Assembly (NCBI GenBank): GCA_053919585.1
Contig: CM132794.1
Length of the DNA: 64,000 nucleotides
Strand: one strand, 5' to 3'
From: Euprymna scolopes
Taxonomy: Eukaryota
Positions 11,835 to 48,080 of the stretch are shown here, piece by piece. The position numbers were made by a program, and so were the translations under genes. The notes under the pieces were generated by a model, which saw only the letters and a program-made list of their open reading frames with translations, searched no databases and was not told the origin of the DNA. Position 1 is the stretch's first letter. Every line of letters begins with the position of its first letter.

Positions 11835-14060
11835 CTTCATAATGTTCTTCAATATTTCTATTGTGAAGCGATACATTGAAATAAAATATAAGAAAAGGAG
11901 ATTATTGAAAAGTATATAATATAAATTAATAAAATTATAAAAAGATAAAAATAACAATCTTTATTTGCACTTTTAATAAAAAAATCTAAAAAATAAATAT
12001 TTTTATTTTATTTAAAATTTTATAAGAAATATATGTTTAGGAAATTATAAAAACAAATATTTCTTTAAATTTTAAAAATAAATTTTTATTTGAATTTATA
12101 AAATAAATATTTGTTTATGAAAGCATAAAAATAAAATCATTGAAATCAAAATAACAAATAATTTATAGGCGTGAGAGAAAAAAAAAGCGAAGGAATTGAT
12201 TTGCCTTGTCACTGCTTCCAGTAGCGTTACACCTGAAATTAGGAAGTATGTTAGCTGACTAAATTTTCATAGAAAGTCAAAATTCTACAAGTAAAAAAAA
12301 ATATATTATTATTTAAATTCAGAAATACATATACATACAATGCCGGCAAAAAGAAAGTCCGCATTTATAATTAAAAAAAAAAACAAAAAAACTTAAACTA
12401 GTATTAATCAGAGGATGAATATATTTAAAAAACACTAGTTTATAGATAAAAGCATCAGGTTACTAAAATGAAGTGGGAATCTATTAACAAAATGTATTTT
12501 ACATTACAAATGCGGTGAGGCTGATAGCTTTTTAATTTAGTGAGTCCTGGAACCAACAAATTTCATTTTAATGAAAGTTCCTGAAAGTTTTATGAGCCTC
12601 TCCCATTTAGCCCTAATGATCACCCTAGAAAAAGACAAGAAGAAACCAAAATTTAAAAATGTAATGAATAAGAAAATAGTTCTTATAGATGAATGACCTG
12701 TGTTTGAGGGCTATGACAATGCAGTTTGTGGGTTAACAGTCTATGTAGTAAAAAATAATGACAATATTGAAATAATTTCAATAATTTTCAATTATACATA
12801 TTTATTTATCAACATAGTGTGAGTTCAAGATGGTAGATGTGTGAATTTCCCAGAATGTTCGAGACTATAGCTCTTTGTCAGGGGATAAACTCCTCCTCAG
12901 TCCTTGGATATATTTTTTCTTCTACTTGAATCAAATAATAGTATGAATGTGAACCATCCTTTACACCCACGCAGAACAGCTTATGTGACCAGGATTCAAG
13001 AATATACATTTCAAAAGTATGATTTTGTTTTGGTGACAGCCTGTTCAGATGATGGATAAAAATGACTTTCTGAGCTAAGACTCCTTTTCGAGTCAAAAGA
13101 TGCATTTTCATTATCCTTGTCACAAAATTAAATGTTCAGTAGGTTATGTCGATTGTCCTTATTAAAATGATGAGCGAATAAATAAAAGAAAGACAGCAAA
13201 AAGAAAACAAGAGGTAAAAAAGAACCCACACTCCTAATGGATTGTCTGTGTGCATTGCAATGTATTGTTTGTTTGTTTTTAGGAAAATATTGATTTGCAT
13301 CTTGCGTTTGCATGAATTAGATTTTACAGAGTCCTTTTAGATTTTTATACATCTCTGATGGAGGACATAGCTATCAGCATTTCTGCAAATGAATATGTAG
13401 ATTTAAATTTTACAAGAAAAAAATAAAGTTAATTAATGGAGCATTAATATTTAAAAAATTCATAATTTTCATTTGATAACACATATCACTTTTCAAGCAG
13501 AGAATTCACTATTGAATTTCTGAACATGTTAAATATTTTAAAACTTAAAATATGTAAGAAATGTCCACTTGAAGCATTGTGTGTAGCAGAGAAATTATTA
13601 TATATTATTGAAAGTCTTCATAATGCAAATTTTAAATGTACTAATTGGAAATGTTAATGGTTTCTAACATTTTGAAAAAAATCTCCATCAAAAGAAAGTT
13701 AAGAATTGATATCGGAGACTCTTTATTCTTTTTTAATTTTGTTCCCATCTTTGAAGTTTAAATAATTGTGCCAATGACCAGAGAAATGGATAAAAATATC
13801 AACTTTCTGTCAGACCAAAACTATCCAATAACAGATTCATGGAATCCCCGCAAAATGATCTCTGATTATAATTTTTAATTCGCTTTTGATGAAGAGATTT
13901 TTTTTTTCTCCAAATATTGGAAATAAGATATATAAATAACCATTAACATCTAGATTATTTTTTTTACATTTGCATTGCCATATTTTTCAATAATATATAA
14001 TTTTTTATTGGTATTTGCTTTCAATTGTTTAATCAAATTCTTCTATATTCAATATTACAG

Positions 14061-17000
14061 CCACATCTGGAATAACTACAGCAACCTCTGCAAAACCTAC
14101 ATCTCTTTTTTCTACTTCTCAAGTTACAACTCCTATGATAACTTCTGTAATTTCTACTAGTACACATGCTTCTACTACTAGAAGGACACCTACTAGATTG
14201 GCAACGACATGGTCAGTTTCTACTCCTAGTCTAACCACATCAATAAAATCTTCTGAAGCAAGTTTAAGTTCATCTGTTTCAAAGAAAATAGAAAAAACGT
14301 CCAAAATATTCTCAACAAAATCAGTTTCAAGTGTTACGAAAACCTTTCTTCATAAAACATCTTCAGCAATGAAAAGTAGTACAATTCCGTCAGCTTCAAG
14401 AAAGACTTCCATTCATCCATCCACAACTATTCGAAGATATACAAACAAATCTACTATACCCCCCACGAAAACCATATCAATTTCAACAACATTAATCCCT
14501 ACTACCACAACACAATCAGTTCCAACAACAACACAAATCTCCACTCCAGAAACCACATATATTCCAACAATAACGCCAATGCTCACTACAACCACAGCAA
14601 AAACACAAACAGCACGATGCATCACTACAAAAATATTAATCCCTACAACCACAATAACCCCCAATTCAAGATCAATCTACACACCAACGACATCAATCCC
14701 TGCTAGATTGACATCAATCCTAACAAAAACAATACCCACAAAAGAAACTACATCAATTCCAACATCTGCAACCACTACACCAAAATCAATACCACCCACA
14801 ACAATTTCCAATATAAAAACGACATCAATTCCAACCACTTCAATAATTACTACAAAAGCCTCATCAATTCCAATCAGTACATCAATACATACTATCACAA
14901 CATCAATGACATCAATTCCAACAAAATCACTATTAAGTACAACATCAAAAGCCACTACAGCAATCATATCAAATCCTACCACAACATCAATTCCAACAGT
15001 CACATCAATAACATCACTCCCCACACCAAAAATATCATATCACACAATATCTATAACCACCTCACCAAAATCCATACTGAGAACCTCACTACAAACTACA
15101 ACATCAATACCTATTTCAGAAACGACATCAATTAAAACAACAAGAACATCAATACCTATTTCAAAACATAAAACAACTACCACACCAATACCTATTACTA
15201 AAACAGCAATTCTAACAACAACACTCCTTATGTCAACATTATCAACAACATGCATTCACCCAAGGTCAATTCTAAATACTACATCGACACTGGCAACAGA
15301 AACCACATCAATTCAAACATCAATCAATACCACTATGGCAAAAAGAATTCAAACAACATTTACTTCAATACCTACATCAATTCTTACTACTAAAACAACA
15401 TCATTGCCAACAACAACAACATCTACTACAACTATATCAATACCAATTAAAAAAACATCAATTCCAACAATAATTACATCAATACCAACAACTTCTATTC
15501 CAACAGCATCTACTATGACTACGTTGATACCAACATCAATAATAACAACAAAAGCATTAATCCCAACTACTACAACAATCTCTACTATAAAAACAACATC
15601 AATTCCAAGTACAACGATATCTACTACAACTACATCAATACCAACTACGATGATATCAATTACAAGAACAGCTACAGCAATAACGACAACTTATATTCCA
15701 ACAGTATCTACTATGACTACAGCGATACCAACATCAATAATAACGACAACATCCATTCCAACAACTACATCAATCCCTACCACAAAAACAACATCAATTA
15801 CAACAACACCTACAACAACTACATCAATACCTACTACACACACTACATCACATCCAACAACAACATCTACTAAAACTATATCAGTACAACCAACAGCGGC
15901 ATCAATTCAGACAACTACATTAATTCCTACTACTAAAACAACATCATTGCCAACAACAAGAACACCTACTACAACTATATCAATACCAACTACTACAACA
16001 TCAATTCCAACAACTATATCAATACCAACGACAACTTCTATTCCAACAACACCTACTATGACTACGTCGATACCAACATCAACACTACACACCTCAACAT
16101 CAATCCCAACAACTACATCAATCCCTTCTACAAAAACAACATCAATGCCAACAACAAAAACAACTTCTACTGCAACTACGTCAATACCAACTACTACAAC
16201 ATCAATTCCAACAACAACTACATCAACACCTACTATGACTACCTCGATTCCAACATCAACACTACACACTTCAACATCAATACCTACTACAAAAACAACA
16301 TCAATGCCAACAACAAAAACAACGTCTACTGCAGCTACCTCAATACCTACTACACACACCAGATCCATTCCAATGAAGACATCTGCTACAACTACATCGA
16401 TACCAGTAACAACTACATCAATCCTTACTACTAAAACAACATCATTTCCAACAACAACGACATCTACTACAACTATATCAATACCAACTACTACAACTTC
16501 AATTCCAACAACAACTATATCAATACCAACGACCACTTCTATTCCAACACCATCTACTATGACTACATCGATACCAACATCAATACTAACAACGACAACA
16601 TCCATTCCAACTACTACATCCCTCCCTACTACAAAAACATCAATTCCAGCAACTACATCTACTACAACATCAATACCTACTACACACACCACACCAATTC
16701 CAACAACATTTACTACAACTATATCAATACCAACTACAGCAGCATCAATTCTGACAAGTACATCAATTCCTACTACTAAAACAACATCATTGCCAACAAC
16801 TACGACATCTACTACCACTATATCAACACCAACTACTACAACATCAATTCCAACAACAACCATATCAATACCAACGACAACTTCTATTCCGACAACTACT
16901 ATGACTACCTCGATACCAACATCAACACTACACACCTCAACATCAATCCCAACAACTACATCAATCCCTACCACAAAAACAACATCAATGCAAACAACAA

Positions 17001-20000
17001 CTACTGCAACTACGTCAATATTTACTACACACACCACATCCATTCCAATGAAGACATCTGCTACAACTACAACTATATCAATACCAACTACTACAACATT
17101 AATTCCAACAACAACTATATCAATACCAACGACAACTTCTATTCCAACACCATCTACTATGACTACATCGATACCAACATCAATACTAACAACGACAACA
17201 TCCATTCCAACTACCACATCCCTCCCTACTACAAAAACATCAATTCCAGCAACTACATCTACTACAACATCAATACCTACTACACACACCACACCAATTC
17301 CAACAACATTTACTACAACTATATCAATACCAACTACAGCAGCATCAATTCTGACAAGTACATCAATTCCTACTACTAAAACAACATCATTGCCAACAAC
17401 TACGACATCTACTACCACTATATCAACACCAACTACTACAACATCAATTCCAACAACAACTATATCAATACCAACGACAACTTCTATTCCAACAACAACT
17501 ACTATGACTACCTCGATACCAACATCAACACTACACACCTCAACATCAATCACAACAACTACATCAATCCCTACCACAAAAACAACATCAATGCCAACAA
17601 CAACAACTACTGCAACTACGTCAATACCTACTACACACACCTCATCCATTCCAATGAAGACATCTGCTACAACTACAACTATATCAATACCAACTACTAC
17701 AACATCAATTCCAACAACAACTATATCAATACCAACGACAACTTCTATTCCAACAACATCTACTATGACTACCTCAATACCAACATCAATACTAACAACG
17801 ACAACATCCATTCCAACTACTACATCCCTCCCTACTACAAAAACATCAATTCCAGCAACTACATCTACTACAACATCAATACCTACTACACACACCACAT
17901 CAATTCCAACAACATTTACTACAACTATATCAATACCAACTACAGCAGCATCAATTCTGACAAGTACATCAATTCCTACTACTAAAACAACATCATTGCC
18001 AACAACTACGACATCTACTACAACTATATCAACACCAACAACTACAACATCAATTCCAACAGCAACTATATCAATACCAACGACAACTTCTATTCCAACA
18101 ACAACTACTATGACTACCTCGATACCAACATCAACACTACACACCTCAACATCAATCACAACAACTACATCAATCCCTACCACAAAAACAACATCAATGC
18201 CAACAACAACAAAAACAACTACTGCAACTATGTCAATACCTACTACACACACCACATCCATTCAAATGAAGACATCTGCTACAACTGCAACTATATCAAT
18301 ACCAACTACTACAACATCAATCCCAACAACAACTATATCAATACCAACGACAACTTCTATTCCAACAACATCTACTATGACTACATCGATACCAACATCA
18401 ATACTAACAACGACAATATCCATTCCGACTACTACGTCCATCCCTACTACAAAAACATCAATTCCAGCAACTACATCTACTACAAAATCAATACCTACTA
18501 CACACACCACATCAATTCCAACAACATTTACTACAACTATATCAATACCGACTACAGCAGCATCAATTCTGACGAGTACATCAATTCCTACTACTAAAAC
18601 AACATCATTGCCAACAACCACGACATCTACTACAACTATATCAATACCAACTACAACATCAATTCCAACAACAACTATATCAATACAAACGACAACTTCT
18701 ATTCCAACAACAACTACTATGACTACCTCGATACCAACATCAGCACTACACACCTCACCATCAATCCCGACAACTACATCAATCCCTACCACAAAAACAA
18801 CATCAATGCAAACAACAACTACTGCAACTACGTCAATACCTACTACACACACCACATCCATTCCAATGAAGACATCTGCTACAACTACAACTATATCAAT
18901 ACCAACTACTACAACATCAATTCCAACAACAACTATATCAATACCAACGACAACTTCTATTCCAACAACATCTACTATAACTATCTCAATACCAACATCA
19001 ATACTAACAACGACAACATCCATTCCAACTACTACATCCCTCCCTAATACAAAAACATCAATTCCAGCAACTACATCTACTACAACATCAATACCTACTA
19101 CACACACCACACCAATTCCAACAACATTTACTACACTTATATCAATACCAACTACAGCAGCATCAATTCTGACAAGTACATCAATTCCTACTACTAAAAC
19201 AACATCATTGCCAACAACTACGACATCTACTACCACTATATCAACACCAACTACTACAACATCAATTCCAACAACAACTATATCAATACCAACGACAACT
19301 TCTATTCCAACAACAACTACTATGACTACCTCGATACCAACATCAACACTACACACCTCAACATCAATCCCAACAACTACATCAATCCCTACTACAAAAA
19401 CATCAATGCCAACAACAACAAAAACAACTACTGCAACTATGTCAATACCTACTACACACACCACATCCCTTCCAATGAAGACATCTGCAACAACTGCAAC
19501 TATATCACTACCAACTACTACAACTTCAATTCCAACAACAACTATATCAATACCAACGACCACTTCTATTCCAACAACATCTACTATGACTACATCGATA
19601 CCAACATCAATACTAACAACGACAACATCCATTCCAACTACTACATCCATCCCTACTACAAAAACATCAATTCCAGCAACAACATCTACTACAACATCAA
19701 TACCTACTACATACACCACATCAATTCCGACAACATTTACTACAACTATATCAATACCCACTACAGCAGCATCAATTCTGACAAGTACATCAATTCCTAC
19801 TACTAAAACAACATCATTGCCAACAACTACGACATCTACTACAACTATATCAATACCAACTACTACAACATCAATTCCAACAACAACCATATCAATACCA
19901 ACGACAACTTCTATTCCGACAACTACTATGACTACCTCGATACCAACATCAACACTACACACCTCAACATCAATCCCAACAACTACATCAATGCAAACAA

Positions 20001-23000
20001 CAACAACAACTACTGCAACTACGTCAATACCTACTACAAAAACAACATCTATTCCAATGAAGACATCTGCTACAACTACAACTATATCAATACAAACTAC
20101 TACATCATCAATTACAACAACAACTATATCAATACCAACGACAACTTCTATTCCAACACCATCTACTATGACTACATCGATACCAACATCAATACTAACA
20201 ACGACAACATCCATTCCAACTACTACATCCCTCCCTACTACAAAAACATCAATTCCAGCAACTACATCTACTACAACATCAATACCTACTACACACACCA
20301 CACCAATTCCAACAACATTTACTACAACTATATCAATACCAACTACAGCAGCATCAATTCTGACAAGTACATCAATTCCTACTACTAAAACAACATCATT
20401 GCCAACAACTACGACATCTACTACCACTATATCAACACCAACTACTACAACATCAATTCCAACAACAACCATATCAATACCAACGACAACTTCTATTCCG
20501 ACAACTACTATGACTACCTCGATACCAACATCAACACTACACACCTCAACATCAATCCCAACAACTACATCAATCCCTACCACAAAAACAACATCAATGC
20601 AAACAACAACTACTGCAACTACGTCAATATTTACTACACACACCACATCCATTCCAATGAAGACATCTGCTACAACTACAACTATATCAATACCAACTAC
20701 TACAACATTAATTCCAACAACAACTATATCAATACCAACGACAACTTCTATTCCAACACCATCTACTATGACTACATCGATACCAACATCAATACTAACA
20801 ACGACAACATCCATTCCAACTACCACATCCCTCCCTACTACAAAAACATCAATTCCAGCAACTACATCTACTACAACATCAATACCTACTACACACACCA
20901 CACCAATTCCAACAACATTTACTACAACTATATCAATACCAACTACAGCAGCATCAATTCTGACAAGTACATCAATTCCTACTACTAAAACAACATCATT
21001 GCCAACAACTACGACATCTACTACCACTATATCAACACCAACTACTACAACATCAATTCCAACAACAACTATATCAATACCAACGACAACTTCTATTCCA
21101 ACAACAACTACTATGACTACCTCGATACCAACATCAACACTACACACCTCAACATCAATCACAACAACTACATCAATCCCTACCACAAAAACAACATCAA
21201 TGCCAACAACAACAACTACTGCAACTACGTCAATACCTACTACACACACCTCATCCATTCCAATGAAGACATCTGCTACAACTACAACTATATCAATACC
21301 AACTACTACAACATCAATTCCAACAACAACTATATCAATACCAACGACAACTTCTATTCCAACAACATCTACTATGACTACCTCAATACCAACATCAATA
21401 CTAACAACGACAACATCCATTCCAACTACTACATCCATCCCTACCACGCACACCACATCCATTACTACTAAACGAACATCATTGCGAACAACGACATATA
21501 CTACAACTATATCAATACCAACTACAACAACATCAATTCCAACAACAACTATATCAATACCAACGACAACTTCTATTCCAACAACATCTACTATTACTAC
21601 ATCGATACCAACATCAACACTACACACCTCAACATCAATCCCAACAACTACATCAATCCCTACTACAAAAACATCAATGCCAACAACAACAAAAACAACT
21701 ACTGCAACTATGTCAATACCTACTACACACACCACATCCCTTCCAATGAAGACATCTGCAACAACTGCAACTATATCAATACCAACTGCTACAACATCAA
21801 TCCCAACAACAACTATATCAATACCAACGACAACTTCTATTCCAACAACATCTACTATGACTACATCGATACCAACATCAATACTAACAACGACAATATC
21901 CATTCCGACTACTACGTCCATCCCTACTACAAAAACATCAATTCCAGCAACTACATCTACTACAACATCAATACCTACTACACACACCACATCAATTCCA
22001 ACAACATTTACTACAACTATATCAATACCCACTACAGCAGCATCAATTCTGACAAGTACATCAATTCCTACTACTAAAACAACATCATTGCCAACAACTA
22101 CGACATCTATTACAACTATATCAATACCAACTACTACAACATCAATTCCAACAACAACTATATCGATACCAACGACAACCTCTATTCCAACGACACCTAC
22201 TATTAGTACATCGATACCAACATCAACACTACACACCTCAACATCAATCCCAACAACTACATCAATGCCAACAACAACAACAACAACAACAACTACTGCA
22301 ACTACGTCAATACCTACTACAAAAACAACATCTATTCCAATGAAGACATCTGCTACAACAACAACTATATCAATACCAACGACAACTTCTATTCCAACAC
22401 CATCTACTATGACTACATCGATACCAACATCAATACTAACAACGACAACATCCATTCCAACTACTACATCCCTCCCTACTACAAAAACATCAATTCCAGC
22501 AACTACATCTACTACAACATCAATACCTACTACACACACCACACCAATTCCAACAACATTTACTACAACTATATCAATACCAACTACAGCAGCATCAATT
22601 CTGACAAGTACATCAATTCCTACTACTAAAACAACATCATTGCCAACAACTACGACATCTACTACCACTATATCAACACCAACTACTACAACATCAATTC
22701 CAACAACAACCATATCAATACCAACGACAACTTCTATTCCGACAACTACTATGACTACCTCGATACCAACATCAACACTACACACCTCAACATCAATCCC
22801 AACAACTACATCAATCCCTACCACAAAAACAACATCAATGCAAACAACAACTACTGCAACTACGTCAATATTTACTACACACACCACATCCATTCCAATG
22901 AAGACATCTGCTACAACTACAACTATATCAATACCAACTACTACAACATTAATTCCAACAACAACTATATCAATACCAACGACAACTTCTATTCCAACAC

Positions 23001-26000
23001 CATCTACTATGACTACATCGATACCAACATCAATACTAACAACGACAACATCCATTCCAACTACTACATCCATCCCTACCACGCACACCACATCCATTAC
23101 TACTAAACGAACATCATTGCGAACAACGACATATACTACAACTATATCAATACCAACTACAACAACATCAATTCCAACAACAACTATATCAATACCAACG
23201 ACAACTTCTATTCCAACAACATCTACTATTACTACATCGATACCAACATCAACACTACACACCTCAACATCAATCCCAACAACTACATCAATCCCTACTA
23301 CAAAAACATCAATGCCAACAACAACAAAAACAACTACTGCAACTATGTCAATACCTACTACACACACCACATCCCTTCCAATGAAGACATCTGCAACAAC
23401 TGCAACTATATCAATACCAACTGCTACAACATCAATCCCAACAACAACTATATCAATACCAACGACAACTTCTATTCCAACAACATCTACTATGACTACA
23501 TCGATACCAACATCAATACTAACAACGACAATATCCATTCCGACTACTACGTCCATCCCTACTACAAAAACATCAATTCCAGCAACTACATCTACTACAA
23601 CATCAATACCTACTACACACACCACATCAATTCCAACAACATTTACTACAACTATATCAATACCCACTACAGCAACATCAATTCTGACAAGTACATCAAT
23701 TCCTACTACTAAAACAACATCATTGCCAACAACTACGACATCTACTACAACTATATCAATACCAACTACTACAACATCAATTCCAACAACAACTATATCA
23801 ATACCAACGACAACCTCTATTCCAACGACACCTACTATTAGTACATCGATACCAACATCAACACTACACACCTCAACATCAATCCCAACAACTACATCAA
23901 TGCCAACAACAACAACAACAACAACAACTACTGCAACTACGTCAATACCTACTACAAAAACAACATCTATTCCAATGAAGACATCTGCTACAACAAGGAC
24001 TATATCAATACCAACGACAACTTCTATTCCAACACCATCTACTATGACTACATCGATACCAACATCAATACTAACAACGACAACATCCATTCCAACTACT
24101 ACATCCCTCCCTACTACAAAAACATCAATTCCAGCAACTACATCTACTACAACATCAATACCTACTACACACACCACACCAATTCCAACAACATTTACTA
24201 CAACTATATCAATACCAACTACAGCAGCATCAATTCTGACAAGTACATCAATTCCTACTACTAAAACAACATCATTGCCAACAACTACGACATCTACTAC
24301 CACTATATCAACACCAACTACTACAACATCAATTCCAACAACAACCATATCAATACCAACGACAACTTCTATTCCGACAACTACTATGACTACCTCGATA
24401 CCAACATCAACACTACACACCTCAACATCAATCCCAACAACTACATCAATCCCTACCACAAAAACAACATCAATGCAAACAACAACTACTGCAACTACGT
24501 CAATATTTACTACACACACCACATCCATTCCAATGAAGACATCTGCTACAACTACAACTATATCAATACCAACTACTACAACATTAATTCCAACAACAAC
24601 TATATCAATACCAACGACAACTTCTATTCCAACACCATCTACTATGACTACATCGATACCAACATCAATACTAACAACGACAACATCCATTCCAACTACC
24701 ACATCCCTCCCTACTACAAAAACATCAATTCCAGCAACTACATCTACTACAACATCAATACCTACTACACACACTACACCAATTCCAACAACATTTACTA
24801 CAACTATATCAATACCAACTACAGCAGCATCAATTCTGACAAGTACATCAATTCCTACTACTAAAACAACATCATTGCCAACAACTACGACATCTACTAC
24901 CACTATATCAACACCAACTACTACAACATCAATTCCAACAACAACTATATCAATACCAACGACAACTTCTATTCCAACAACAACTACTATGACTACCTCG
25001 ATACCAACATCAACACTACACACCTCAACATCAATCACAACAACTACATCAATCCCTACCACAAAAACAACATCAATGCCAACAACAACAACTACTGCAA
25101 CTACGTCAATACCTACTACACACACCTCATCCATTCCAATGAAGACATCTGCTACAACTACAACTATATCAATACCAACTACTACAACATCAATTCCAAC
25201 AACAACTATATCAATACCAACGACAACTTCTATTCCAACAACATCTACTATGACTACCTCAATACCAACATCAATACTAACAACGACAACATCCATTCCA
25301 ACTACTACATCCATCCCTACCACGCACACCACATCCATTACTACTAAACGAACATCATTGCGAACAACGACATATACTACAACTATATCAATACCAACTA
25401 CAACAACATCAATTCCAACAACAACTATATCAATACCAACGACAACTTCTATTCCAACAACATCTACTATTACTACATCGATACCAACATCAACACTACA
25501 CACCTCAACATCAATCCCAACAACTACATCAATCCCTACTACAAAAACATCAATGCCAACAACAACAAAAACAACTACTGCAACTATGTCAATACCTACT
25601 ACACACACCACATCCCTTCCAATGAAGACATCTGCAACAACTGCAACTATATCAATACCAACTGCTACAACATCAATCCCAACAACAACTATATCAATAC
25701 CAACGACAACTTCTATTCCAACAACATCTACTATGACTACATCGATACCAACATCAATACTAACAACGACAATATCCATTCCGACTACTACGTCCATCCC
25801 TACTACAAAAACATCAATTCCAGCAACTACATCTACTACAACATCAATACCTACTACACACACCACATCAATTCCAACAACATTTACTACAACTATATCA
25901 ATACCCACTACAGCAACATCAATTCTGACAAGTACATCAATTCCTACTACTAAAACAACATCATTGCCAACAACTACGACATCTACTACAACTATATCAA

Positions 26001-35000: not shown

Positions 35001-38000
35001 CCTCTATTCCAACAACAACTACTATGACAACATCGATACCAACATCAACACTATACACCTCAACATCAATCCCAACAACTACATCAATCCCTACTGCAAA
35101 AACAACATCAATGCCAACAACAACAACCTCCACTGCAACTACATCTATACCTAATACACACACCACATCAATTCCAATAAAGACACCTGCTACAACTACA
35201 TCGATACCAGTAACAACTACATCAATTCCTACTACTAAAACAACATCATTGCCAACAACTACGACATCTATTACAACTATATCAATACCAACTACTACAA
35301 CATCAATTCCAACAACAACTATATCAATACAAACGAGAACTTCTATTCCAACTACATCTACTATGACTACATCGATTCCAACATCAATACTAACAACGAC
35401 AACATCCATTCCAACAACGACATCAATCCCTACCACACAAACAACATCAATTCCAACAATATCTACTCAAACAATATCAATACCTACCACACACACCATA
35501 TCCATTACTACTAAACGAATATTATTGCCAACAACGACATCTACTACAACTATATCAATACCAACTACAACAACATCAATTCCAACAATAACTATATCAA
35601 TACCAACGACAACTTCTATTCCAATAACATCTACTATTACTAAATCGATACCAACGTCAACACTACACACCTCAACATCAACCCCAACAACTACATCAAT
35701 CACAACTACAAAAACAACATCAATGCCAACAACAACAACTACTGCAACTACGTCAATGCCTACTACACACACCACATCTATTCCAATGAAGACATCTGCT
35801 ACAACTACAACTATATCAATACCAACTACTACAACATCATTGATAACAACAACTATATCAATACCAACGACAACTTCTATTCCAACAACATCTACTATGA
35901 CTACCTCGATACCAACATCAATACTAACAACGACAAAATCCATTCCAACTACTAGATCCATCCCTACTACAAAAACATCAATTCCAGCAACAACATCTAC
36001 TACAACGTCAATACCTACTACACACACCACATCAATACCAACAACATTTACTACAACTATATCAATACCAACTACAGCAGCATCAATTCTGACAAGTACA
36101 TCAATTCCTACTACTAAAACAACATCATTGCAAACAACTACGACATCTACTACAACTATATCAATACCAACTACTACAACATCAATTCCTGCTACAACAA
36201 CTATATCAATACCAACGACAACTTCTATTCCAACTCCAACTACTATTACCTCGATACCAACATCAACACTACACACCTCAACATCAATCCCAACAACTAC
36301 ATCAATCCCTACCAAAAAAACAACATCAATGCCAACAACAACAACAACTACTGCAACTACATCATTGCCTACTACACACACCACATCAATTCCAATGAAG
36401 ACATCTGCTACAACTGCAACTATATCAATACCAACTACTACAACATCAATTCCAACAACTATATCAATACCAACGACAACTTCCATTCCAACAACAACTA
36501 CTATGACAACCTCGATACCAACATCAACACTACACACCTCAACATCAATCCCAACAACTACATCAATCCCTACTGCAAAAACAACATCAATGCCAACAAC
36601 AACAACAACAACCTCTGCTGCAACTACATCCATACCTACTACACAGACCACATCAATTCCAATAAAGACACCTGCTACAACTACATCGATACCAGTAACA
36701 ACTACATCAATTCCTACTACTAAAAAAACATCATTGCCAACAACTACGGCATCTACTACAACTATATCAATACCAACTACTACAACATCAATTCCAACAA
36801 AAACTATATCAATACAAACGAGAACTTCTATTCCAACTACATCTACTATGACTACATCGATTCCAACATCAATACTAACAACGACAACATCCATTCCAAC
36901 AACGACATCAATCCCTACCACACAAACAACATCAATTCCAACATCTACTCAAACAACATCAATACCTACCAAACACACCACATCCATTACTACTAAACGA
37001 ACATCATTGCCAACAACAACGACATCTACTACAACTATATCAATACCAACTACAACAACATCAATTCCAACAACAACTATATCATCACCAACGACATCTT
37101 CTATTCCAACAACATCTACTATTACTACATCGATACCAACGTCAACACTACACACCTCAACATCAACCCCAACAACTACATCAATCACTACTACAAAAAC
37201 AACATCAATGCCAACAACAACAACTACTGCAACTACGTCAATGCCTACTACACACACCACATCTATTCCAATGAAGACATCTGCTACAACTATATCAATA
37301 CCAACTACTACAACATCATTGACAACAACAACTATATCAATACCAACGACAACTTCTATTCCAACACCATCTACTATGACTACCTCGATATTAACATCAA
37401 TACTAACAACGACAAAATCCATTCCAACAACTACATCCATCCCTACTACAAAAACATCAATTCCAGCAACAACATCTACTACAACATCAATACCTACTAC
37501 ACACACCACATCAATTCCGACAAAATTTACAACTATATCAATACCAACTACAGCAGCATCAATTCTGACAAGTACATCAATTCCTACTACTAAAACAACA
37601 TCATTGCCAACAACTACGAGATCTACTACAACTATATCAATACCAACTACTACAACATCAATTCCAACAACAACAACTATATCAATACCAACGACAACTT
37701 CTATTCCAACTCCAACTACTATGACTACCTCGATACCAACATCAACACTACACACCTCAACATCAATCCCAACAACTACATCAATCCCTACCACAAAAAC
37801 AACATCAATGCCAACAACAACAGCAACTACTGCAACTACTTCAATACCTACTACACACACCACATCAATTCCAATGAAGACATCTGCTACAACTGCAACT
37901 ATATCAATACCAACTACTACAACATCAATTCCAACAACAACTATATCAATACCAACGACAACTTCTATTCCAACAACAACTACTATGACAACCTCGATAC

Positions 38001-41000
38001 CAATATCAACACTACACACCTCAACATCAATCCCAACAACTACATCAATCCCTACTGCAAAAACAACATCAATGCCAACAAAAACAACAACCTCTGCTGC
38101 AACTACATCCATACCTACTACACAGACCAAATCAATTCCAATAAAGACACCTGCTACTACATCGATACCACTAAAAACTACATCAATTTCTACTACTAAA
38201 AAACCATCATTGCCAAAAACTACGATATCTACTACAACTATATCAATACCAACTACTACAACATACATTCAAACAACAACTATATCAATACAAACGAGAA
38301 CTTCTATTCCAACTACATCTACTATGACTACATCGATTCCAACATCAATACAAACAACGACAACATCCAGTCCAACAACTACATCAATCCCTACCACACA
38401 AACAACATCAATTCAAAAAACATCTACTAAAACAACATCGATACCTTCCACACACGCCACATCCATTACTACTAAACGAACATCATTGCCAACAACAACG
38501 ACATCTACTACAACTATATCAATACCAACGAAAACTTCTATTCCAACATATGCTATTACTACATCAATATCAACATCCACACTACACACCTCAACATCAA
38601 TCCCAACAACTACATCAATCCCTACTACAAAAACAACATCGATGCCAACAAGAACAACACCAACCTTTACTGCAACTACATCAATACCTACTACACACAC
38701 CACATCAATTCCAATGAAGACATCTGCTACAAAAACACCGATACCAGTAACAACTACATCAATTCCTACTACTAAAACAACATCATTGCCAACAACAACC
38801 TCTACTGCAACATCAATACCTACTACACACACCACATCGATTCCAATGAGGAATTCTGCTACAACAACACCGATACCAGTAACAACTACATCAATTCCTA
38901 CTACTAAAACAACATCATTGCCAACAAGAACGACATCTACTACAACTATATCAATACCAACTACTACAACATCAATTCCAACAACAATTATATCATTAAC
39001 AACGACAACTTCTATTCCAAAATCATCAACTATGACTACATCGATACCAACATCAATACTAACAACGACAACATCAATTCCAACTACTACATCCATCCAT
39101 TCTACAAGTACATCAATTCCGGCAACAACATCTACGACAACATCAATACCTACTACACACACCACATCAATTCCAAAAACATTTACTACAACTATATCAA
39201 TACCAACTACAGCAGCATCAATTCTGACAAGTACATCAATTCTTACTACTAAAACAACATCATTGCCAACAACTACGACATCTACTACAACTATATCAAT
39301 ACCAACTACTACATCAATTCCAACAACAACTATATCAATACCAACGACAACTTCTATTACAACAACACCGACTATTACTACCTTGATACCAACATCAACA
39401 CTACACACCTCAACATCAATCCCAACTACTACATCAATCCCTACTACAAAAACATTATCAATGCCAACAACAACAACAACCTCTACTGCAACTACATCCA
39501 TACCTACTACACACACCACATCCATTCCAATAAAGACATCTACTACAACTACATCGATACCAGTAACAACTACATCATTGCCTACTACTAAAACAACATC
39601 ATTGCCAACAACAACGACATCTACTACAACTATATCAATACCAATTACTACAACATCAATTCCAACAACAACTATATCAATAACAACAACTTCCATTCCA
39701 ACAACATCTACTATGACTACATCGATACCAACATCAATACTAACAACGACAATATCCATTCCAACAACTACATCAATCCGTACCACAGCAACAACATCAA
39801 TTCCAACAACATCTACTACAACGCCATCAATACCTACTACACACACCAAATCCATTCCAATAACAACATCTACTAAAACTATATTAGTACCACCAACAGC
39901 GCCATCAATTCAGACAACAACTACATTAATTCCTACTACAAAACTAACATCATTGCCAACAACAACGACATCGAATACAACTATATCAATACCAACTACT
40001 ATAACATCAATTCCAACAACTATATCAATACCAACAACAACTTCTATTTCAACAACATCTACCATGACTCCATCGATGCCAACATCAATACTAATAACGA
40101 CAACATCCATTCCAACAACTACATCAATTCCTACAACACAATCATCAATTCCAACAACATCTACTACAACTATATCAATACCTACTACGCACACGACATC
40201 CATTCCACTAACAACATCTACTAAAACTATATCAGTACCACCAACAGCGGCATCAATTCAGACAACAACTACATCAAATCCTACTACTAAAACAACATCA
40301 TTGCCAAAAACATCTACTATGACTACATCGATACCAACATCAATACTAACAACGATAACATCCATTCGAACAACTACATCAATCTCTACAACAGAAACAA
40401 CATCTATTCCAAAAACAACGACATTTACTGCAACTACATCAATACCTACTACACACATCACATCAATTGCAACGCAGACATCTACTACAACTACATCCGT
40501 ATCAGCTACAACTACACCAATTCCTACTACTAAAACAACATCATTGCCAACATCTACTACAATAATATCAATACCAACTAAAACCACATCAGTTCCAACA
40601 ACAACTATATCAATACCAACTACAACATCAATTCCAACAACTATATCAATACCAACCACAACCTCTATTCCAACAACATCTATGACTACACCGATACCAA
40701 CATCAATACTAATAACGACAAGATACATTCCAACTACTACATCAATCCCTACTACACAAAAAACATCAACACAAGCAACACCTTCTACAACATCAATACC
40801 TACTACACACACTACACCAATTCCAACAACGACAACATCTGCTACAACTATATCAGTACCTACTATAGCAGCATCAATTAAGACAACTACATCAGTTCCT
40901 ACTACGAAAACCACATCATTGCAAACAACGACATCTACTACAACTATATCAATACCCCCTACTACAACATCAATTCCAACAACAACTATATCAATACCAA

Positions 41001-44000
41001 CGACATCTACTATGACTACATCGATACCAACATCAATACTAACAACGACAACATTCATTCCAACAATTACATCAATCACTACCACACAAAAAACATCAAT
41101 TCCAACAACATCTAATGCATCAATACCTACTACACATACCACATCGATTACTACTAAACAAACATCATTGCCAACAAGAACGACATCTACTACAACTATA
41201 TCAATACCAACTACTACAACATCAATTCCAACAACAACTATATCAATACCAACGACAACTTCTATTCCAACAACATCTACTATGACTACATCGATACCAA
41301 CATCAATACTAACAACAACAACATCTATTCCAATAACTACATCAATCCCTACTAAACAAACAACATCAATTCCAAAAACATCTACTAGAACTACATCAAT
41401 ACCTACTACACACACCACATTCATTCCAACAACAACATCTACTAAAACTATATCAGTACCACCAACAGCGGCATCAATTCAGACAACTACAATAAATCCT
41501 ACTACTAAACCAAAATCATTGCCAACAACAACGACATCTACTACAACTATATCAATACCAACTACTACAACATCAATTCCAACAACAACTATATCAATAC
41601 CAATGACAACTTCTATTCCAACAAAATCTACTATGACTACATCGATACCAACATCATTACTAACAACGACAACATCCATTCCAACTACTACATCCATCCC
41701 TACTACAAAAACACCTATTCCAGCAACAACATCTACTACAATATCAATACCTACTACACTAACCACATCAATTCCAACAACATTTACTACAACTATATCA
41801 ATACCAACTACAGCAGCATCAATGCTGACAAGTACATCAATTCCTACTACTAAAACAACATCATTTCCAACAATGACATCTACAACAACTAAATTAATAA
41901 AAACAACACCAACATCGATTCCAATAACCACTATGTCGATTACAATGACAACTTCTATTCCAACATCTACTATGACTACATCAATACCAACATCAATACG
42001 TACAATTCCAACAACTACATCAATCACTACTACAAAACCAACATCAATTCTAGCAACATCTACTACAATAACAGCAATACCTACTATACACACAACATCA
42101 ATTCCAACTACATCCGTTCCAGCTACAACTACATCAATCCCCACTACTAAAACAACATCATTTCCAACAACAACGACATCTACCACAACTATATCAATAC
42201 GAACTACTACTACATCAATTCCGACAACAACTATATCAGTACCAACGACAACTTCTATTCCAACAACATCTACTATGACTACATCGATACCAACATCAAT
42301 AATAATAACCACAACATCAATCCCAACAACTACATCAATCACTACTACATCATTCGCAACAACGACAACATCTACTACAATTCTGTCAGTACCAACTACA
42401 TCAAGACCAACAACAACCTCTTTTATAACTACATCGACACCATCATCAACACTAACAACATCAATTCCAACAATAACTGCATCCATACCTTCTTCAAGAA
42501 CATCAACTACAAGTACATCAATACCTACTAAAGCAACATCAATTCAGTCAACAACTACATTGATTCCAACTACAAAAACCATATCATTGCCTATAACGAC
42601 ATCTGTAACCATATCAATACCAACTGCAACAACATCAATTCCAACCGTAACTACATCAATGCCAACCACAACTTCTAGTCCAACAATATCGACTATAACT
42701 ACATCGATACCAACATCAATAATCAGAACATCAATTCCAAAAACTACATCCATACATACGTCAAAAACTACATCGATTCCAACAACCACATCTACTACAA
42801 CTACATCTATACCATCATCCTTATCCACAACGATCACATCAATACCAACAACCACATTAATACCTACTACATCACCAATTCCAACAACAAAAACATCAAT
42901 TCCTACAATAATTTCAATACATACTCCAAAACCAATATCAATTCCAACAACAGTTTCAACTACAACTATATGGATACCAACTATGACATCAATTCCAACA
43001 ACATCTATACAAACTATATCAATACCAACGACAGCATTATCCACTAGGAAAACATCACTTCCTACAACAACTACATCAATACTTACAACTTCTGTTCCAA
43101 CAAAAACAATTTCTACTACAACTACTTCTATACCAACATACATTCCCACAATAACTACATCAATAAATACTTCAAAGAGGTCATCAATATTTACAAAAAT
43201 AGAAACCACAATTACTTCGATACCAACGACAGCAAAACCCACTACAATTTCGATGCCAACAACTTTATCAATACCTTCTACACACACTACAATTATTCCA
43301 ACAACATTTACAATTACATCAATACCTACTACAGCATCAATTCAAACAACTACATCATTCCCTATTACCAAAACAACACCATTTTTAACAAGGACACCTA
43401 CATCAAGACCAACTATGACAACATCAGTTTCAGCAACTACATCAATTTCAGCAACTACATCAGTACCAACGACAATTTCTATTCCATCATATACTATGTC
43501 TTCATTAATACCAACATCAATATTAAAAACATCAATTCCAACAACTGCATCCACACCTACTAGAAAAACATCAATTCCAACAACAACATCTACTACAACT
43601 CCCTCAGTACATACTACAGCAACATCAATTCAGACAACTACATCAATTCCTACAACTAAAACAACATCATTGCCAACATCTACTACAATTATATTAATTC
43701 CAACAAGAACTACATCTATACGAATGACAACTTCTATTCCAACGACATCTACTATAACTACATCGATGCCAACATCAATACTAACGACAACATCAATTCC
43801 AACAACAACTACATCCACAACTACTACAATTCCAACAAGAACATCAACTACATCAATACCTACAACAGAAAAATCAATTCAGACAACAACTACATTAATT
43901 CTAACTACAAAAAGTATATCATTGCCTACAACAACGACATCTACAACAACTATATCTATGCCAACTACGACAACATCAATTCCAACAACAACTACATCAA

Positions 44001-47000
44001 TACCAACTTCTATCCCAACAACAATATCAACTATAACTACATCCATACCAACATCAATACTCACAACAACATCAAATCCAACAACTACATTCATACATAC
44101 TACAAAAACCACATCAATTCCAAGAATATTTACTACAACTACTATAACATCTGTTCCAACAACAATATCTATTAACACTACATCGATTCCAACATCAATA
44201 CTCACAACAACAATTTCAATTCCAACAAGTACATCAATACCTACCGCAAAATCAACTTCAATTCCAACAACAATATCTACTACATCTAGAGAAATCACTT
44301 CAATTTCAACACCACTAATACTTACTACAACATCGATTCAAACGACAACATGTATACCAACTACATCAATAACTTCATTACCCCTTACAACAACTTCCAT
44401 TCCAACAACAATATCAACCACAGCAATGTCAATACCCATTACAAAAACTACATCAATACCTACTATCACATCAATTCAAACATCTATACCAACTACATCA
44501 TCATTTTCTACTACAGAAACCACATCCATTTCAACAAAAACATCAATACTTACTACAAAAACAATATCTACTACAACCACAACGCCAACTTCACAAACAA
44601 CATCCATGCCAACAATAACTTCATCCATATATACAATTACATCAATACCTACAACAATTTCCATTCCAACAACAACGGTATCTACTACAAATACATCAGT
44701 ACAGACTCTGACCACATCAATTCCTACAATTACACAAATGCCTACTACACAAGCCACATCAATTCCAACAACAACTATTGCAACTACATCGATACCAACG
44801 ACATCAATACCAACTACGGCAACATCAATTCCAACAACTACATCAATACTTACAACAGAAACACCAATTTCAAAAACATCATCAATATCTACAACATTAA
44901 CTACCTCATTGCCCACTACAACATCAATTCCAACGACATCAATCTCTACAACATCAATAAAAACAACATCTATACCAACTTCATCAGCCACTACAACAAT
45001 CATGTCACTTCCGACAACACCAACATCAACTACCACATCAACATCTATAGCAACAACAATGATATCAACTACGACAGCAATACCCACTACACAAACTATA
45101 TCAATACCTACTACCACAACATCAATTCAAACAACAACGACCTCTACGCCAACTATATCAACTACAACAATTCTCACATCTCTACCTACTACAACCTATA
45201 TTCCAACATCTACTACAACCATATCAATACCAACAACATCAATACCCACTATGAGCATAACTGCATCAATCCCAAGTACATCAAAGCAATCTACGCCAAG
45301 GTCAGTTCCAACAAAAACTAAAGCAACACCTACTATAGAAACCACATCAATTCCGACAACATCAATTCCTACTACAAGAACATCAATCCAAACAACATCT
45401 ATATCAACTACATCATTACCAACAAGTATATCCAGGCTTACAAGACCAATACCAACTACATCTATTCCAACAACAATATCCACTACAACCACATCAATAC
45501 CAACGACATCAATAACCACTATGACAACATCAATTCCAACAATAATTACATCAATACCTATTATAGAAACCACATCAATTCCAAAAACAACACTAATTTC
45601 GACTTCATTAACATCAACCTCTATTATAGCATCAATTCAAACAACATCTATACCAACTACACCGAAAACATCAGTACTCACTACAACAACCATGCCCATT
45701 CCAACAACATCGCTACCTACCACTTCTATTCCAACAACAATATTCACTACAACCACATCAATACCAACTACTCACATTGCATCAACACCCACTACCACAA
45801 CGTTAATTCCAACAAGAATGACATCTATCCCTACCATATCAACCACTATCATTCCAACAACATCCCTTCCCACTACAATAACAACTTCCTTTCCAACATC
45901 TACATCGACATCAATACCCACTACAGAAATTATATTGGTCCCTACGACCATAATCACATCTATTCCAACATCAATCCCCACTACAACATCAATACCTATT
46001 ACAGAAACCACATCAATTCCAACTACATCAATACTTACTACAACATCAATTCCAACATCAATGCCCATTACATCAATTCCAACAACACTTTCTCCATCAA
46101 CAACTTCAATTCCTACTACTACTACTACATCAATTCAAACATCTATACCAACTACATTAGTCACCTCATTACCCACTACAAGAACCACGTCTATTCCAAC
46201 ATCAATACATACAACAACTTTCATTCCAACATCGGTATCTTCTACAACCACATCAATACCAATTACAGCTATACCCACAACACAACATACATCAATCCAT
46301 ACAACCATTACTACATCTATTCCAATAACATCTATCACACCAATGAGAAGATTAATTCCAACATCAGTACCTACTACAGAATCCACACTAATTCCAACCA
46401 CCACATCAATCCATATGACTACAGCAACATCAATTCCTACTACTTCAATATCAATTCTAAGAACATCATTACCCTCCCCAACAACATCATTACCCTCCCC
46501 AACAACATCAACCCCCACTAAACTGACCAGATCAATTCCTTCTACCAAAACCACCTCAATTCTCACATCAATTCCTTTTATAGTAACCACGTTGGTTTCC
46601 CCTACTACATCAACTCAAACAACATCAGTATCCTCCAGGAAAATCCCATCAATTCAATCAACATTTAAATCTACTAGAGAGACTACATCTATACTGAGAA
46701 CCACCTCAATCCCTATTATAACTACAACCTCAATTGTAATAACTTCAATTGCAACAACAATTACCACATGTATGTTAACAACTTCAATCCCCACTAGTAA
46801 AACTACATCAATTAAAACATCAATCCCAACAACTACAAAAACATCAATCCCTACTACCACAATCACATCAATTCCAACTACAACTATCACATCAATACCG
46901 ATTAAAACACCTACTTCAATTATAACCCCAATCACATCAATTTCAACATCAATAACTACTACAGAAACCACATCAATTCCAATGACAAGCACATTGATTA

Positions 47001-48080
47001 CTTCAATACCCACTACTACAGCTGTGTCAATTCCGACAACAACCACATCAATTTCAACAAAAACATCAACACTGACTTCAAAAACTACATCGATTTCAAC
47101 AACATCAACACCCAGTACAAGCACATCAATTCCCAAAACAACACCAATACAACCTAGAACAACCATTTCAATTCCAACAACATCAATACTTACTACGAAA
47201 CTCATAGCAATTCCAAGAAGAACGTCAATAATACCCACTATAACATCAATACCAGCTGCAACAACCACATCAATTCCACATAGAACAACAATACCCACTA
47301 CAGAAACCACACCAATGTCTATGACGAGCACATCACTACCTACAACTATCACTTCAATACCCACAACAATCACCACATCACTTCTGACAACTTCAATACC
47401 CACTACAGAAATCAAGTCAATTCCAACAACATCCATACCTACTAGAACAACAACCACATCAATACCCACGACAGAAACTGCATCATTCCTCACTCCCACA
47501 ACTTCAATAATGCAATCAATACCTACTCCAGAAACGTCATCATTACCTACTAGATTAATTCCAAGGACAACTTCAATTGTCACTACTACAAAATCCCCAT
47601 CAATACCTACTACAATGACCACATCAATACCAACAAGCATCTCAATACACACTACACCAACCACATCAATTTCAACACCCACATCAATACCCACAAGTCT
47701 TCATAGCATATCATCATTAGCAACTTATCATACTCCTTCCACTCATATAACAGTACCTTTTTCCAAATTTAGTACTACTACAACACCTTGTCTAACTAAT
47801 TCAACCAAAACTTTGTCCACTCTCATCTACTCTGCTGTAAGTAGGACTAAGACCACTCCTGTTAAATCCCATTCAGTAACACTAATTTCTCACCGTCGTT
47901 CATCTAACACCAAATCTTCTAAATTGACAAAACCTAATTATCCAACTGCCTCCATACCAACAACTGAAATCACTTCAACTTCATCTATGGCCACATCTGT
48001 AACTGCCACTTCTAAGCTTTCAACTCTAACACCTCTAACATCACGTTTAATTCCAACTTCAACTGCAGTTTGGTCCTCAG
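14061..48080 (+). CDS. Giant internal coding exon of a mucin-like protein (PTS / Thr-Ser-Ile-Pro O-glycosylation domain)
   Basis: ORF open from before 14135 to 48127; acceptor ..ttctatattcaatattacAG| at 14060 and donor tcctcaG|GTattg at 48081 coincide with the start and end of S/T-rich coding; length 34,020 = 3 x 11,340, phase 1 at both ends; no signal peptide at the annotated Met, so other exons are expected. Confidence 0.88.
16400..38500 (+). repeat. Coding tandem-repeat core: TTSIP-type micro-units inside a ~600-bp (~200 aa) unit, with higher-order duplications
   Basis: 16561 and 17161, and 20161 and 20761, repeat at exactly 600 bp; marker catccctaccacgcacacc recurs at 21436, 23071 and 25312; boundaries approximate. 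Confidence 0.9.

What the first reader, a model, noticed from the sequence alone, without database searches (positions are those of the whole stretch)
14061..48080. A single 34,020-bp coding exon
Seen: 11,340 codons with no stop, bounded by plausible AG/GT sites in phase 1-1. The many repeat-length indels all keep frame and no transposon interrupts it, although both flanks are dense with them. Known: the largest human coding exons (MUC16, TTN) are roughly 17-22 kb. Inference: an expressed, selected mucin-type domain of over 1 MDa before glycosylation, among the largest coding exons known. Symmetric phase would allow skipping.
Basis: partly seen in the sequence, partly recalled or inferred. Interest (0 to 1): 0.7.

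Follow-up and report, generated by a model that had tools for sequence, protein, structure and literature searches.

The report
Giant mucin exon in squid gene
The 34-kb stop-free stretch is a real protein-coding exon kept intact by selection, most likely the sugar-carrying middle of a nearly 1-Mb mucus-polymer gene of a cephalopod; it is a large example of a known kind, not a record.

Summary
The frame is open from 14033 to 48124 (11,364 codons, no stop). The other two + frames have 122 and 375 stops, and base composition predicts about 520. AG at 14059-60 and GT at 48081-82 give a 34,020-nt phase 1-1 exon. Two further phase-1 acceptors (exon start 14082 or 14124) are equally possible.

The product is T 44%, S 16%, I 14%, P 11%, with 5 Cys and no Asp, about 1.16 MDa. 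It is built from about 55 copies of a 200-residue unit.

Selection is visible. All repeat offsets are multiples of 3. Among 205 distinct substitutions in 22 full units there is no nonsense change against 5.4 expected, and dN/dS is about 0.6.

New here is the gene context. On the same strand lie mucin-type D-domain exons 264-390 kb upstream (three C8, plus a VWD that matches D3 of MUC2/MUC5AC/MUC5B). A terminal cystine-knot exon lies 520 kb downstream. This is the layout of a gel-forming mucin.

Not shown: transcription, the splice junctions and the array length.

The size is not a record. Human MUC12 alleles and the Chironomus Balbiani ring genes equal or exceed it. This scan's own unchecked notes report exons of 47 kb or more elsewhere in this genome.

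The parts
14033..48124 (+). Stop-free reading frame (11,364 codons) between TAA 14030-32 and the stop at 48125-27
14061..48080 (+). Proposed giant PTS exon, 34,020 nt, phase 1-1. It encodes about 11,340 residues (T 44%, S 16%, I 14%, P 11%; 6,850 Ser+Thr; 5 Cys; 0 Asp; 1,163 kDa).
   Evidence: the junctions are predicted only, with no RNA evidence
14059..14123 (+). Acceptor zone with three phase-1 AG sites (exon start 14061, 14082 or 14124). The first two arise from a 21-nt duplication (TRF row 14056-14101).
48081..48086 (+). Predicted donor GTATTG after CAG. If it is not used, the frame ends 15 codons later at 48125.
14061..16060 (+). Non-repetitive Ser/Thr-rich head of the exon (25-mers 80-100% unique). 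666 codons with 0 stops against 35 expected.
16535..28000 (+). Homogenised core of the array. The units are about 600 nt (200 aa) and sit in higher-order repeats of 1,635, 2,241 and 3,876 nt. Few 25-mers are unique, and the longest exact internal repeat is 1,293 nt.
28001..44860 (+). Progressively diverged full and partial copies of the same 200-aa unit. Unit HMM scores fall from about 250 to under 20 bits.
44861..48080 (+). Degenerate, essentially unique tail of the PTS domain. Over 42062-48079 there are 2,006 codons with 0 stops against 97 expected.
5762..7618 (+). LINE-type reverse transcriptase remnant in the upstream intron (RVT_1, zf-RVT)
55361..55906 (-). LTR-retroelement RNase H remnant in the downstream intron

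Best explanation
The stretch is a genuine coding exon that selection keeps open. It encodes the central, heavily O-glycosylated Pro/Thr/Ser (mucin) domain of a secreted gel-forming-mucin-like protein. The gene would run about 943 kb on the + strand of contig C12. Its N-terminal D assemblies (VWD-C8 modules for multimerisation) lie at 145.635-145.760 Mb. The 34-kb PTS exon lies at 146.024-146.058 Mb. A terminal cystine-knot (CTCK) exon for tail-to-tail dimerisation lies at 146.578 Mb. The exon grew by unequal crossing-over of a 600-nt unit: young homogenised copies sit in the 5' centre and old diverged copies at the edges. Only in-frame, stop-free variants survived. Shown: the open frame, the composition, the repeat anatomy, the signs of selection, and the positions and identities of the D3-type VWD, the C8 exons and the CTCK exon. 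Inferred: that all these exons are on one transcript, the exact splice sites, expression, glycosylation and secretion.
For: Coding under selection:
- There are 0 stops in 11,364 codons, against 122 and 375 in the other + frames and about 520 expected from base composition.
- The unique, old ends alone give 0 against 35 and 0 against 97 expected.
- Composition depends on codon position: position 2 is 73% C, position 1 is 64% A, position 3 is 85% A/T.
- Every repeat offset is a multiple of 3.
- In 22 full units, 205 distinct substitutions split into 83 synonymous, 122 non-synonymous and 0 nonsense. The expectation is 59.7, 139.8 and 5.4.
- No transposon sits inside, while RT and RNase H remnants fill both flanks.
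- The array and both exon ends are single-locus in the 5.9-Gb genome.

Gene context:
- + strand C8 hits lie at C12:145635514, 145666194 and 145759699. + strand VWD hits lie at 145748106 and 145754233.
- The VWD exon matches MUC5AC 875-988, MUC5B 868-980, MUC2 838-951 and the start of the MUC2 D3 crystal construct, with E from 1e-14 to 4e-38.
- A + strand CTCK exon at C12:146577924-146578205 (E 5e-17 with a profile of six paralogous CTCK exons) has a clean acceptor and a TAA directly after the knot. It weakly matches the VWF CTCK domain and norrin.
- Genome-wide, eight loci with a D3-type VWD exon pair one-to-one with eight CTCK exons. Each pair shares contig and strand, with the CTCK 0.22-1.6 Mb downstream. 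Ours is 0.83 Mb.
- The CTCK exon has a phase-1 acceptor, which is compatible with the phase-1 donor at 48080.
Against: There is no RNA or read evidence of any kind, so transcription, the splice sites and inclusion of the exon are unproven. Linkage of the exon to the D-domain and CTCK exons rests only on order, strand and the one-to-one pairing. No exon was found in the 264 kb and 520 kb between them, and the +/-100 kb I could read shows only retroelement ORFs. No D4 (VWD/C8), VWC or CysD exon was detected between the PTS exon and the CTCK. Only one of the three expected N-terminal VWD domains was listed. No related protein was found in the protein collection, either with the unique head or with the array among proteins of 5,200-16,700 aa. 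The copy number in the assembly is unchecked.
Confidence: 0.68

Rival explanations
1. The exon is real and coding but belongs to a separate mucin-like gene, either nested in or lying beside a giant intron of the VWD...CTCK gene. That gene would have its own small, undetected signal-peptide and tail exons.
For: No exon physically links it to the D-domain or CTCK exons, and the gaps are 264 kb and 520 kb. If the donor at 48080 is not used, the frame stops 15 codons later and poly(A) signals follow from 48594 on. Weak candidate signal-peptide exons exist 27-31 kb upstream of the exon (window -14024 and -17136), but they are unsupported.
Against: The layout D3, then PTS, then CTCK on one strand is exactly that of gel-forming mucins. 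The eight-for-eight VWD/CTCK pairing shows that the mucin gene spans this position. Same-strand nested genes are rare (general knowledge). A strict scan for signal-peptide exons found nothing in 114 kb upstream.
Confidence: 0.17
2. The exon is real, but its length in this assembly is wrong (array expanded or collapsed), or it differs greatly between haplotypes. In that case '34,020 bp' is not a fixed property.
For: The 16.5-28 kb part is highly homogenised, with few unique 25-mers and higher-order repeats of 1.6-3.9 kb. Mucin VNTR exons are notoriously variable and error-prone in assemblies (PMC13345508). No reads could be laid.
Against: The longest exact internal repeat is only 1,293 nt, and copies differ by many substitutions and in-frame indels. 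Reads of 10-20 kb would therefore anchor uniquely. There is no N and no frame break. About half of the exon (28-48 kb) is largely unique sequence.
Confidence: 0.1
3. It is a non-coding A/C-rich satellite, or a dead former exon, whose unit happens to lack stops in one frame.
For: Amplifying a stop-free unit gives a long open frame without selection. No homologue, Pfam family or RNA evidence exists.
Against: The old, unique ends are also stop-free: 0 against 35 and 0 against 97 expected. Among independent substitutions there is no nonsense change against 5.4 expected, and synonymous changes are in excess. There is no 1- or 2-nt indel in 34 kb of A-rich sequence. Transposons are excluded in a transposon-dense region. 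Canonical splice sites sit at both ends of the frame.
Confidence: 0.04

Closest known systems
Vertebrate gel-forming mucins (MUC2, MUC5AC, MUC5B; MUC6 and MUC19 for the tail layout)
   Same: The order is the same: D assemblies, one very large central exon of tandem Thr/Ser/Pro repeats, then a C-terminal cystine knot. The upstream VWD exon matches their D3 VWD at E 1e-14 to 4e-38. Repeats are more degenerate at the array edges, as reported for human mucin VNTRs (PMC13345508).
   Different: The repeat has no sequence relation to theirs: a 200-aa unit built on a TTSIPTT-like motif with 14% Ile. No CysD, D4 or VWC exons were detected. The introns are hundreds of kb long, giving a gene of about 0.94 Mb. 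Lang et al. 2016 could not assign invertebrate mucin-like proteins to any vertebrate mucin family (PMC4948705).
Human tethered-mucin VNTR exons (MUC12, MUC4, MUC16)
   Same: A single coding exon of tens of kb made of in-frame tandem repeats. MUC12 alleles give proteins up to 23,080 aa and MUC4 alleles reach 27,843 bp (PMC13345508).
   Different: Those are membrane-tethered mucins with SEA/EGF/TM tails (my knowledge). Here the neighbours are VWD/C8 and CTCK exons.
Chironomus Balbiani ring genes BR1, BR2.1, BR2.2, BR6
   Same: Genes of about 40 kb with four introns and a tandem-repeat centre of about 35 kb that encode giant secretory proteins (PMC4192438). The exon scale is the same.
   Different: They are an unrelated protein family, with Cys-containing silk-like repeats (my knowledge). 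Those genes are compact with short introns, whereas this exon sits between very long introns.
Other giant PTS exons noted by this scan in the same genome (s1-268935, s1-268957, s1-288442)
   Same: Stop-free Thr/Ser-rich exons of 6 kb to over 47 kb in mucin-like genes of the same animal (AI notes, unchecked by me).
   Different: They are different loci with different repeats. A protein search of the genome with 500 aa of this array found close copies only inside this exon.

Membership tests
Mucin (PTS) domain | Long region dominated by Thr/Ser with Pro, in tandem repeats, poor in Cys and aromatic residues | tested here: met
   T 44%, S 16%, P 11% over 11,339 residues, with 5 Cys and about 55 unit-equivalents of 200 aa
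Mucin (PTS) domain | Dense O-glycosylation of the Ser/Thr | not testable with these tools
   There are 6,850 candidate Ser/Thr sites; this needs glycoproteomics
Mucin (PTS) domain | Encoded by one large uninterrupted exon that is transcribed | tested here: inconclusive
   The uninterrupted open frame and the flanking AG/GT are shown.
Gel-forming mucin (MUC2/MUC5/MUC6/MUC19 type) | N-terminal VWD-C8-TIL assemblies D1-D2-D'-D3 upstream of the PTS domain in the same protein | tested here: inconclusive
   Three C8 exons and one D3-type VWD (in two exons) lie on the same strand 264-390 kb upstream. The D1 and D2 VWD exons were not listed and TIL was not searched. A shared transcript is not shown.
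Gel-forming mucin (MUC2/MUC5/MUC6/MUC19 type) | C-terminal cystine knot (CTCK) ending the protein | tested here: inconclusive
   A CTCK exon with a stop directly after the knot lies 520 kb downstream on the same strand, with a compatible phase-1 acceptor. Its link to the exon is inferred from the eight-for-eight VWD/CTCK pairing.
Gel-forming mucin (MUC2/MUC5/MUC6/MUC19 type) | D4 assembly, VWC domains and CysD domains (present in MUC2/MUC5AC/MUC5B, absent in MUC6/MUC19-like tails; my knowledge) | tested here: not met
   No VWD, C8, VWC or Mucin2_WxxW hit lies on C12 + strand between 146.06 and 146.58 Mb. Sensitivity for short split exons is limited.
Tethered mucin (MUC1/4/12/16 type) | SEA or NIDO/AMOP/VWD plus EGF, transmembrane helix and cytoplasmic tail after the PTS domain | not tested
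The +100 kb that I read shows no such open frame of 100 codons or more.

The most novel reading that the evidence does not exclude
The exon is always included. The animal would then make a gel-forming mucin with a core of over 1.2 MDa from a gene of about 0.94 Mb, in which a 34-kb exon must be recognised between introns of hundreds of kb. Recognition might be helped by the exon's near-absence of G: 4% G, 5.7 GT per kb against 54 in the flanks, and only three GTAAG. That leaves almost no cryptic splice sites. It would make the locus a natural test case for how splicing copes with extreme exon and intron sizes together.
Probability: 0.15. Interest if true: 0.5.

Novelty: new member of a known kind. 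Interest (0 to 1): 0.3.

Why it matters
It adds a well-delimited invertebrate example to the short list of coding exons above 30 kb, and it places that exon in a recognisable gel-forming-mucin gene of a cephalopod, where mucus proteins are hardly described. The locus combines an extreme exon with extreme introns, which is useful for studying exon definition. The clean gradient from homogenised to degenerate repeats, all in frame, is a good substrate for studying how VNTR exons grow under a reading-frame constraint. It does not change what is known about mucins.

Tried and rejected
I stopped there, so read laying had no run ids. I therefore sent no letters of those two stretches to any search tool afterwards and worked beside them, using the mid-array 15401-43999 and other loci. 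Only local scripts read them.

2. Protein word searches found nothing at E <= 1e-3. I tried the unique head (446 aa) and residues 1-3000 of the array against proteins of 5,200-16,700 aa.

3. Pfam on the head and on 1,000 aa of the array found nothing. The ESM Atlas gave only chance-level hits of 0.77.

4. The signal-peptide exon scan of 114 kb upstream found nothing at strict settings. At loose settings it gave 13 unsupported candidates, which I did not use.

5. The +/-100 kb of flank shows only retroelement-like ORFs of 100 codons or more.

6. Pfam Cys_knot and VWC on the own genome missed the local CTCK. A profile of six paralogous CTCK exons found it.

7. CysD (PF13330) occurs only in another gene, at C12:144.73-144.76 Mb on the minus strand.

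8. G depletion as an adaptive device: rejected as shown evidence. Third codon positions carry G (7.2%) as often as C (7.7%), so the GT scarcity follows from amino-acid and AT-rich codon choice.

9. The long antisense ORFs (up to 2,548 aa) are mirror images of the low-complexity coding strand, not genes.

10. I did not run the big HMMER search. A low-complexity query would return compositional hits, and the claim does not rest on absence of relatives.

Exons were searched one by one by reference, and the joined step was left out.
Full report
WHAT IS THERE

The + strand frame that contains 14061 is open from 14033 to 48124, which is 11,364 codons. It lies between a TAA at 14030-32 and a stop at 48125-27. 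Inside 14061-48080 the other two + frames carry 122 and 375 stops. The minus frames carry 45, 1,280 and 2,186. Base composition alone predicts about 520 in-frame stops.

Two more AGs are also phase-1 acceptors: 14080-81, which comes from a 21-nt duplication of the first, and 14122-23, which sits behind the best pyrimidine tract. The start is therefore uncertain within 63 nt, but the phase is not. A consensus GTAAGT at 47837 is a phase-0 alternative donor. The PTS-like frame continues 81 codons beyond it, so 48080 is the better end. If no donor is used, the frame ends 15 codons later.

THE PRODUCT

The exon encodes 11,339 full codons with a mass of 1,163 kDa. The composition is T 44%, S 16%, I 14%, P 11%. 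There are 6,850 Ser+Thr, 5 Cys, no Asp, and 10 N-glycosylation sequons. Pfam finds nothing, as expected for a disordered mucin domain.

REPEAT ANATOMY

A profile of one 202-aa unit finds 74 full or partial copies, about 55 unit-equivalents, from residue 306 to about residue 11,220.

- The commonest repeat offsets are 600, 1,635, 2,241 and 606 nt. Higher-order periods run up to 3,876 nt.
- The region 16.5-28 kb is homogenised, with 0-26% unique 25-mers.
- From 28 kb onwards the copies diverge steadily.
- The head (14-16 kb) and the tail (42-48 kb) are 80-100% unique.
- This centre-young, edge-old pattern is what unequal crossing-over produces. It is also reported for human mucin VNTRs (PMC13345508).
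- The longest exact internal repeat is 1,293 nt, so long reads should resolve the array. That is an argument, not a test.

IS IT SELECTED CODING SEQUENCE OR A LUCKY SATELLITE?

Four observations argue for selection.

1. The unique, old ends are stop-free on their own: 666 codons with 0 stops against 35 expected, and 2,006 codons with 0 against 97 expected.
2. Every offset between repeated 25-mers (16,241 of 16,241), and 23,824 of 23,825 for 12-mers, is a multiple of 3. Not one 1- or 2-nt indel has survived in 34 kb of A-rich DNA.
3. In 22 full units I counted 205 distinct substitutions against the consensus: 83 synonymous, 122 non-synonymous and 0 nonsense. If changes fell at random with the observed spectrum, 59.7, 139.8 and 5.4 would be expected. 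That gives dN/dS of about 0.6, and P of about 0.005 for seeing no nonsense change.
4. No transposon interrupts the exon, while both flanks and the +/-100 kb around are filled with reverse-transcriptase, protease and RNase H remnants.

The array and both exon ends occur only at this locus in the 5.9-Gb genome. The next-best matches are 33-50% compositional look-alikes on C13 and C37.

WHICH GENE?

The window is C12:146010001-146074000, + strand. Searching the animal's own genome with mucin families placed three sets of exons on the same strand.

- C8 exons lie at 145,635,514, at 145,666,194 and at 145,759,699. A VWD split over 145,748,106-444 and 145,754,233-385 lies between the second and third.
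- The VWD exon, searched alone by reference, matches MUC5AC 875-988, MUC5B 868-980, MUC2 838-951 and the first residues of the MUC2 D3 crystal construct. It is therefore the D3 VWD, the module that directly precedes the PTS region in gel-forming mucins.
- Pfam's Cys_knot and VWC models found nothing downstream. A profile built from six paralogous cystine-knot exons of this genome (alignment A1) found a + strand exon at 146,577,924-146,578,205 with E 5e-17.
- That exon has a strong acceptor in phase 1, the full set of knot cysteines, and a TAA immediately after the knot. It is a terminal coding exon. It weakly matches the VWF CTCK domain and norrin.

Genome-wide, the eight loci with a D3-type VWD exon are C38:20.82, C12:134.34, C13:43.35, C12:145.75, C8:104.92, C25:32.29, C8:104.26 and C12:85.62 Mb. 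They pair one-to-one with the eight CTCK exons. Each pair is on the same contig and strand, with the CTCK 0.22-1.6 Mb downstream.

The pair 145.75 to 146.58 Mb (0.83 Mb) brackets the giant exon. The exon lies on the same strand, at the position where such proteins carry their PTS domain, and its phase-1 donor fits the phase-1 CTCK acceptor. I therefore read the exon as the central domain of a gel-forming-mucin-like gene of about 943 kb.

This reading is an inference from order, strand and pairing. I did not build or search a joined (spliced) model, and I have no transcript. No D4, VWC or CysD exon was detected between the PTS exon and the CTCK, which resembles the short MUC6/MUC19-type tails (my knowledge). 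The six CysD hits lie in another mucin gene at 144.73-144.76 Mb on the minus strand.

HOW IT MOST LIKELY WORKS

This paragraph is inferred from the established biology of gel-forming mucins. CTCK knots dimerise the chains tail to tail. The D assemblies multimerise them head to head. The 11,000-residue Thr/Ser/Pro rod is densely O-glycosylated, holds water and gives the gel its volume. The backbone is mildly basic (318 K, 89 R, 147 H, 28 E, 0 D).

The exon's G poverty (4% G; GT 5.7 per kb against 54 per kb in the flanks; three GTAAG) leaves few cryptic splice sites. However, third codon positions use G as often as C, so this is a by-product of composition, not a demonstrated adaptation.

WHAT COULD NOT BE DONE

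Transcription, the junctions, skipping and the array length therefore remain untested. Protein searches found no relative.

COMPARISON AND NOVELTY

- Long-read pangenome work gives human MUC12 proteins of 4,677-23,080 aa from one VNTR exon, called there the largest human coding exon. It gives MUC4 alleles up to 27,843 bp (PMC13345508).
- The Chironomus BR1/BR2.1/BR2.2/BR6 genes are about 40 kb with four introns and a repeat centre of about 35 kb (PMC4192438).
- Gel-forming-mucin-type proteins are widespread in invertebrates (PMC4948705).
- Earlier notes of this scan, which I did not check, report exons of at least 47 kb and of over 22,000 residues elsewhere in this genome. They call the animal a squid or cephalopod. 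The scan has therefore met this kind of exon before, on other DNA of this genome.

The finding is a real, large, well-behaved member of a known kind. The added value here is the quantified evidence for selection and the placement in a gel-forming-mucin gene of nearly 1 Mb.

Noticed in passing
G000 C12:144728507-144756718, minus strand (outside the window): Six Mucin2_WxxW (CysD) exons, one inside a 1,740-aa open frame. This is a second, different mucin gene 1.3 Mb upstream on the opposite strand, and these are the only CysD hits in the genome.
   Followed up: no
Genome-wide: C38:20.60-20.89, C12:134.05-134.37, C13:42.51-43.44, C8:104.35-104.94, C8:104.01-104.27, C25:31.68-32.32, C12:84.03-85.62 Mb: Seven further loci pair a D3-type VWD exon (with C8 exons) with one CTCK exon 0.22-1.6 Mb downstream on the same strand. 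The animal seems to have eight gel-forming-mucin/VWF-like genes of very large span.
   Followed up: partly
G000 C19:138.21-138.80 Mb (+), C19:99.02-99.17 Mb (-), C23:117.57-118.93 Mb (-): Dozens of regularly spaced VWD and C8 exons form FCGBP- or zonadhesin-like arrays of VWD-C8 units.
   Followed up: no
window 14056-14123: A 21-nt duplication copies the acceptor (TACAG), and a third AG follows a better pyrimidine tract. This gives three in-phase acceptors within 63 nt, so alternative 3' splice sites could add or drop 7 or 21 residues.
   Followed up: partly
window 18262-25908, minus strand: A 2,548-aa antisense ORF (Val/Gly/Asp/Ile-rich) and several others of 400-950 aa. They are mirror images of the low-complexity coding strand, not genes.
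   Followed up: yes
L019-L023, about window +114 kb to +158 kb: A tandem array of large units (spacing about 2.5-10 kb, mostly 5.5-6.5 kb), each carrying the same reverse-transcriptase-like ORF fragments on the minus strand. At least eight copies are present.
   Followed up: no
G000 C37:34441470-34448222 (+) and C13:114600332-114601522 (-): Other Thr-rich open frames (2,396 aa on C37; a broken one on C13) with 33-55% identity to this array. They are probably further PTS exons related only by composition.
   Followed up: no
window 5762-7618 (+): A 619-aa LINE reverse transcriptase ORF (RVT_1 plus zf-RVT) at GC 54%, much higher than its surroundings. Earlier notes describe it as a Tx1/L1-clade element at a U2 fragment.
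   Followed up: partly
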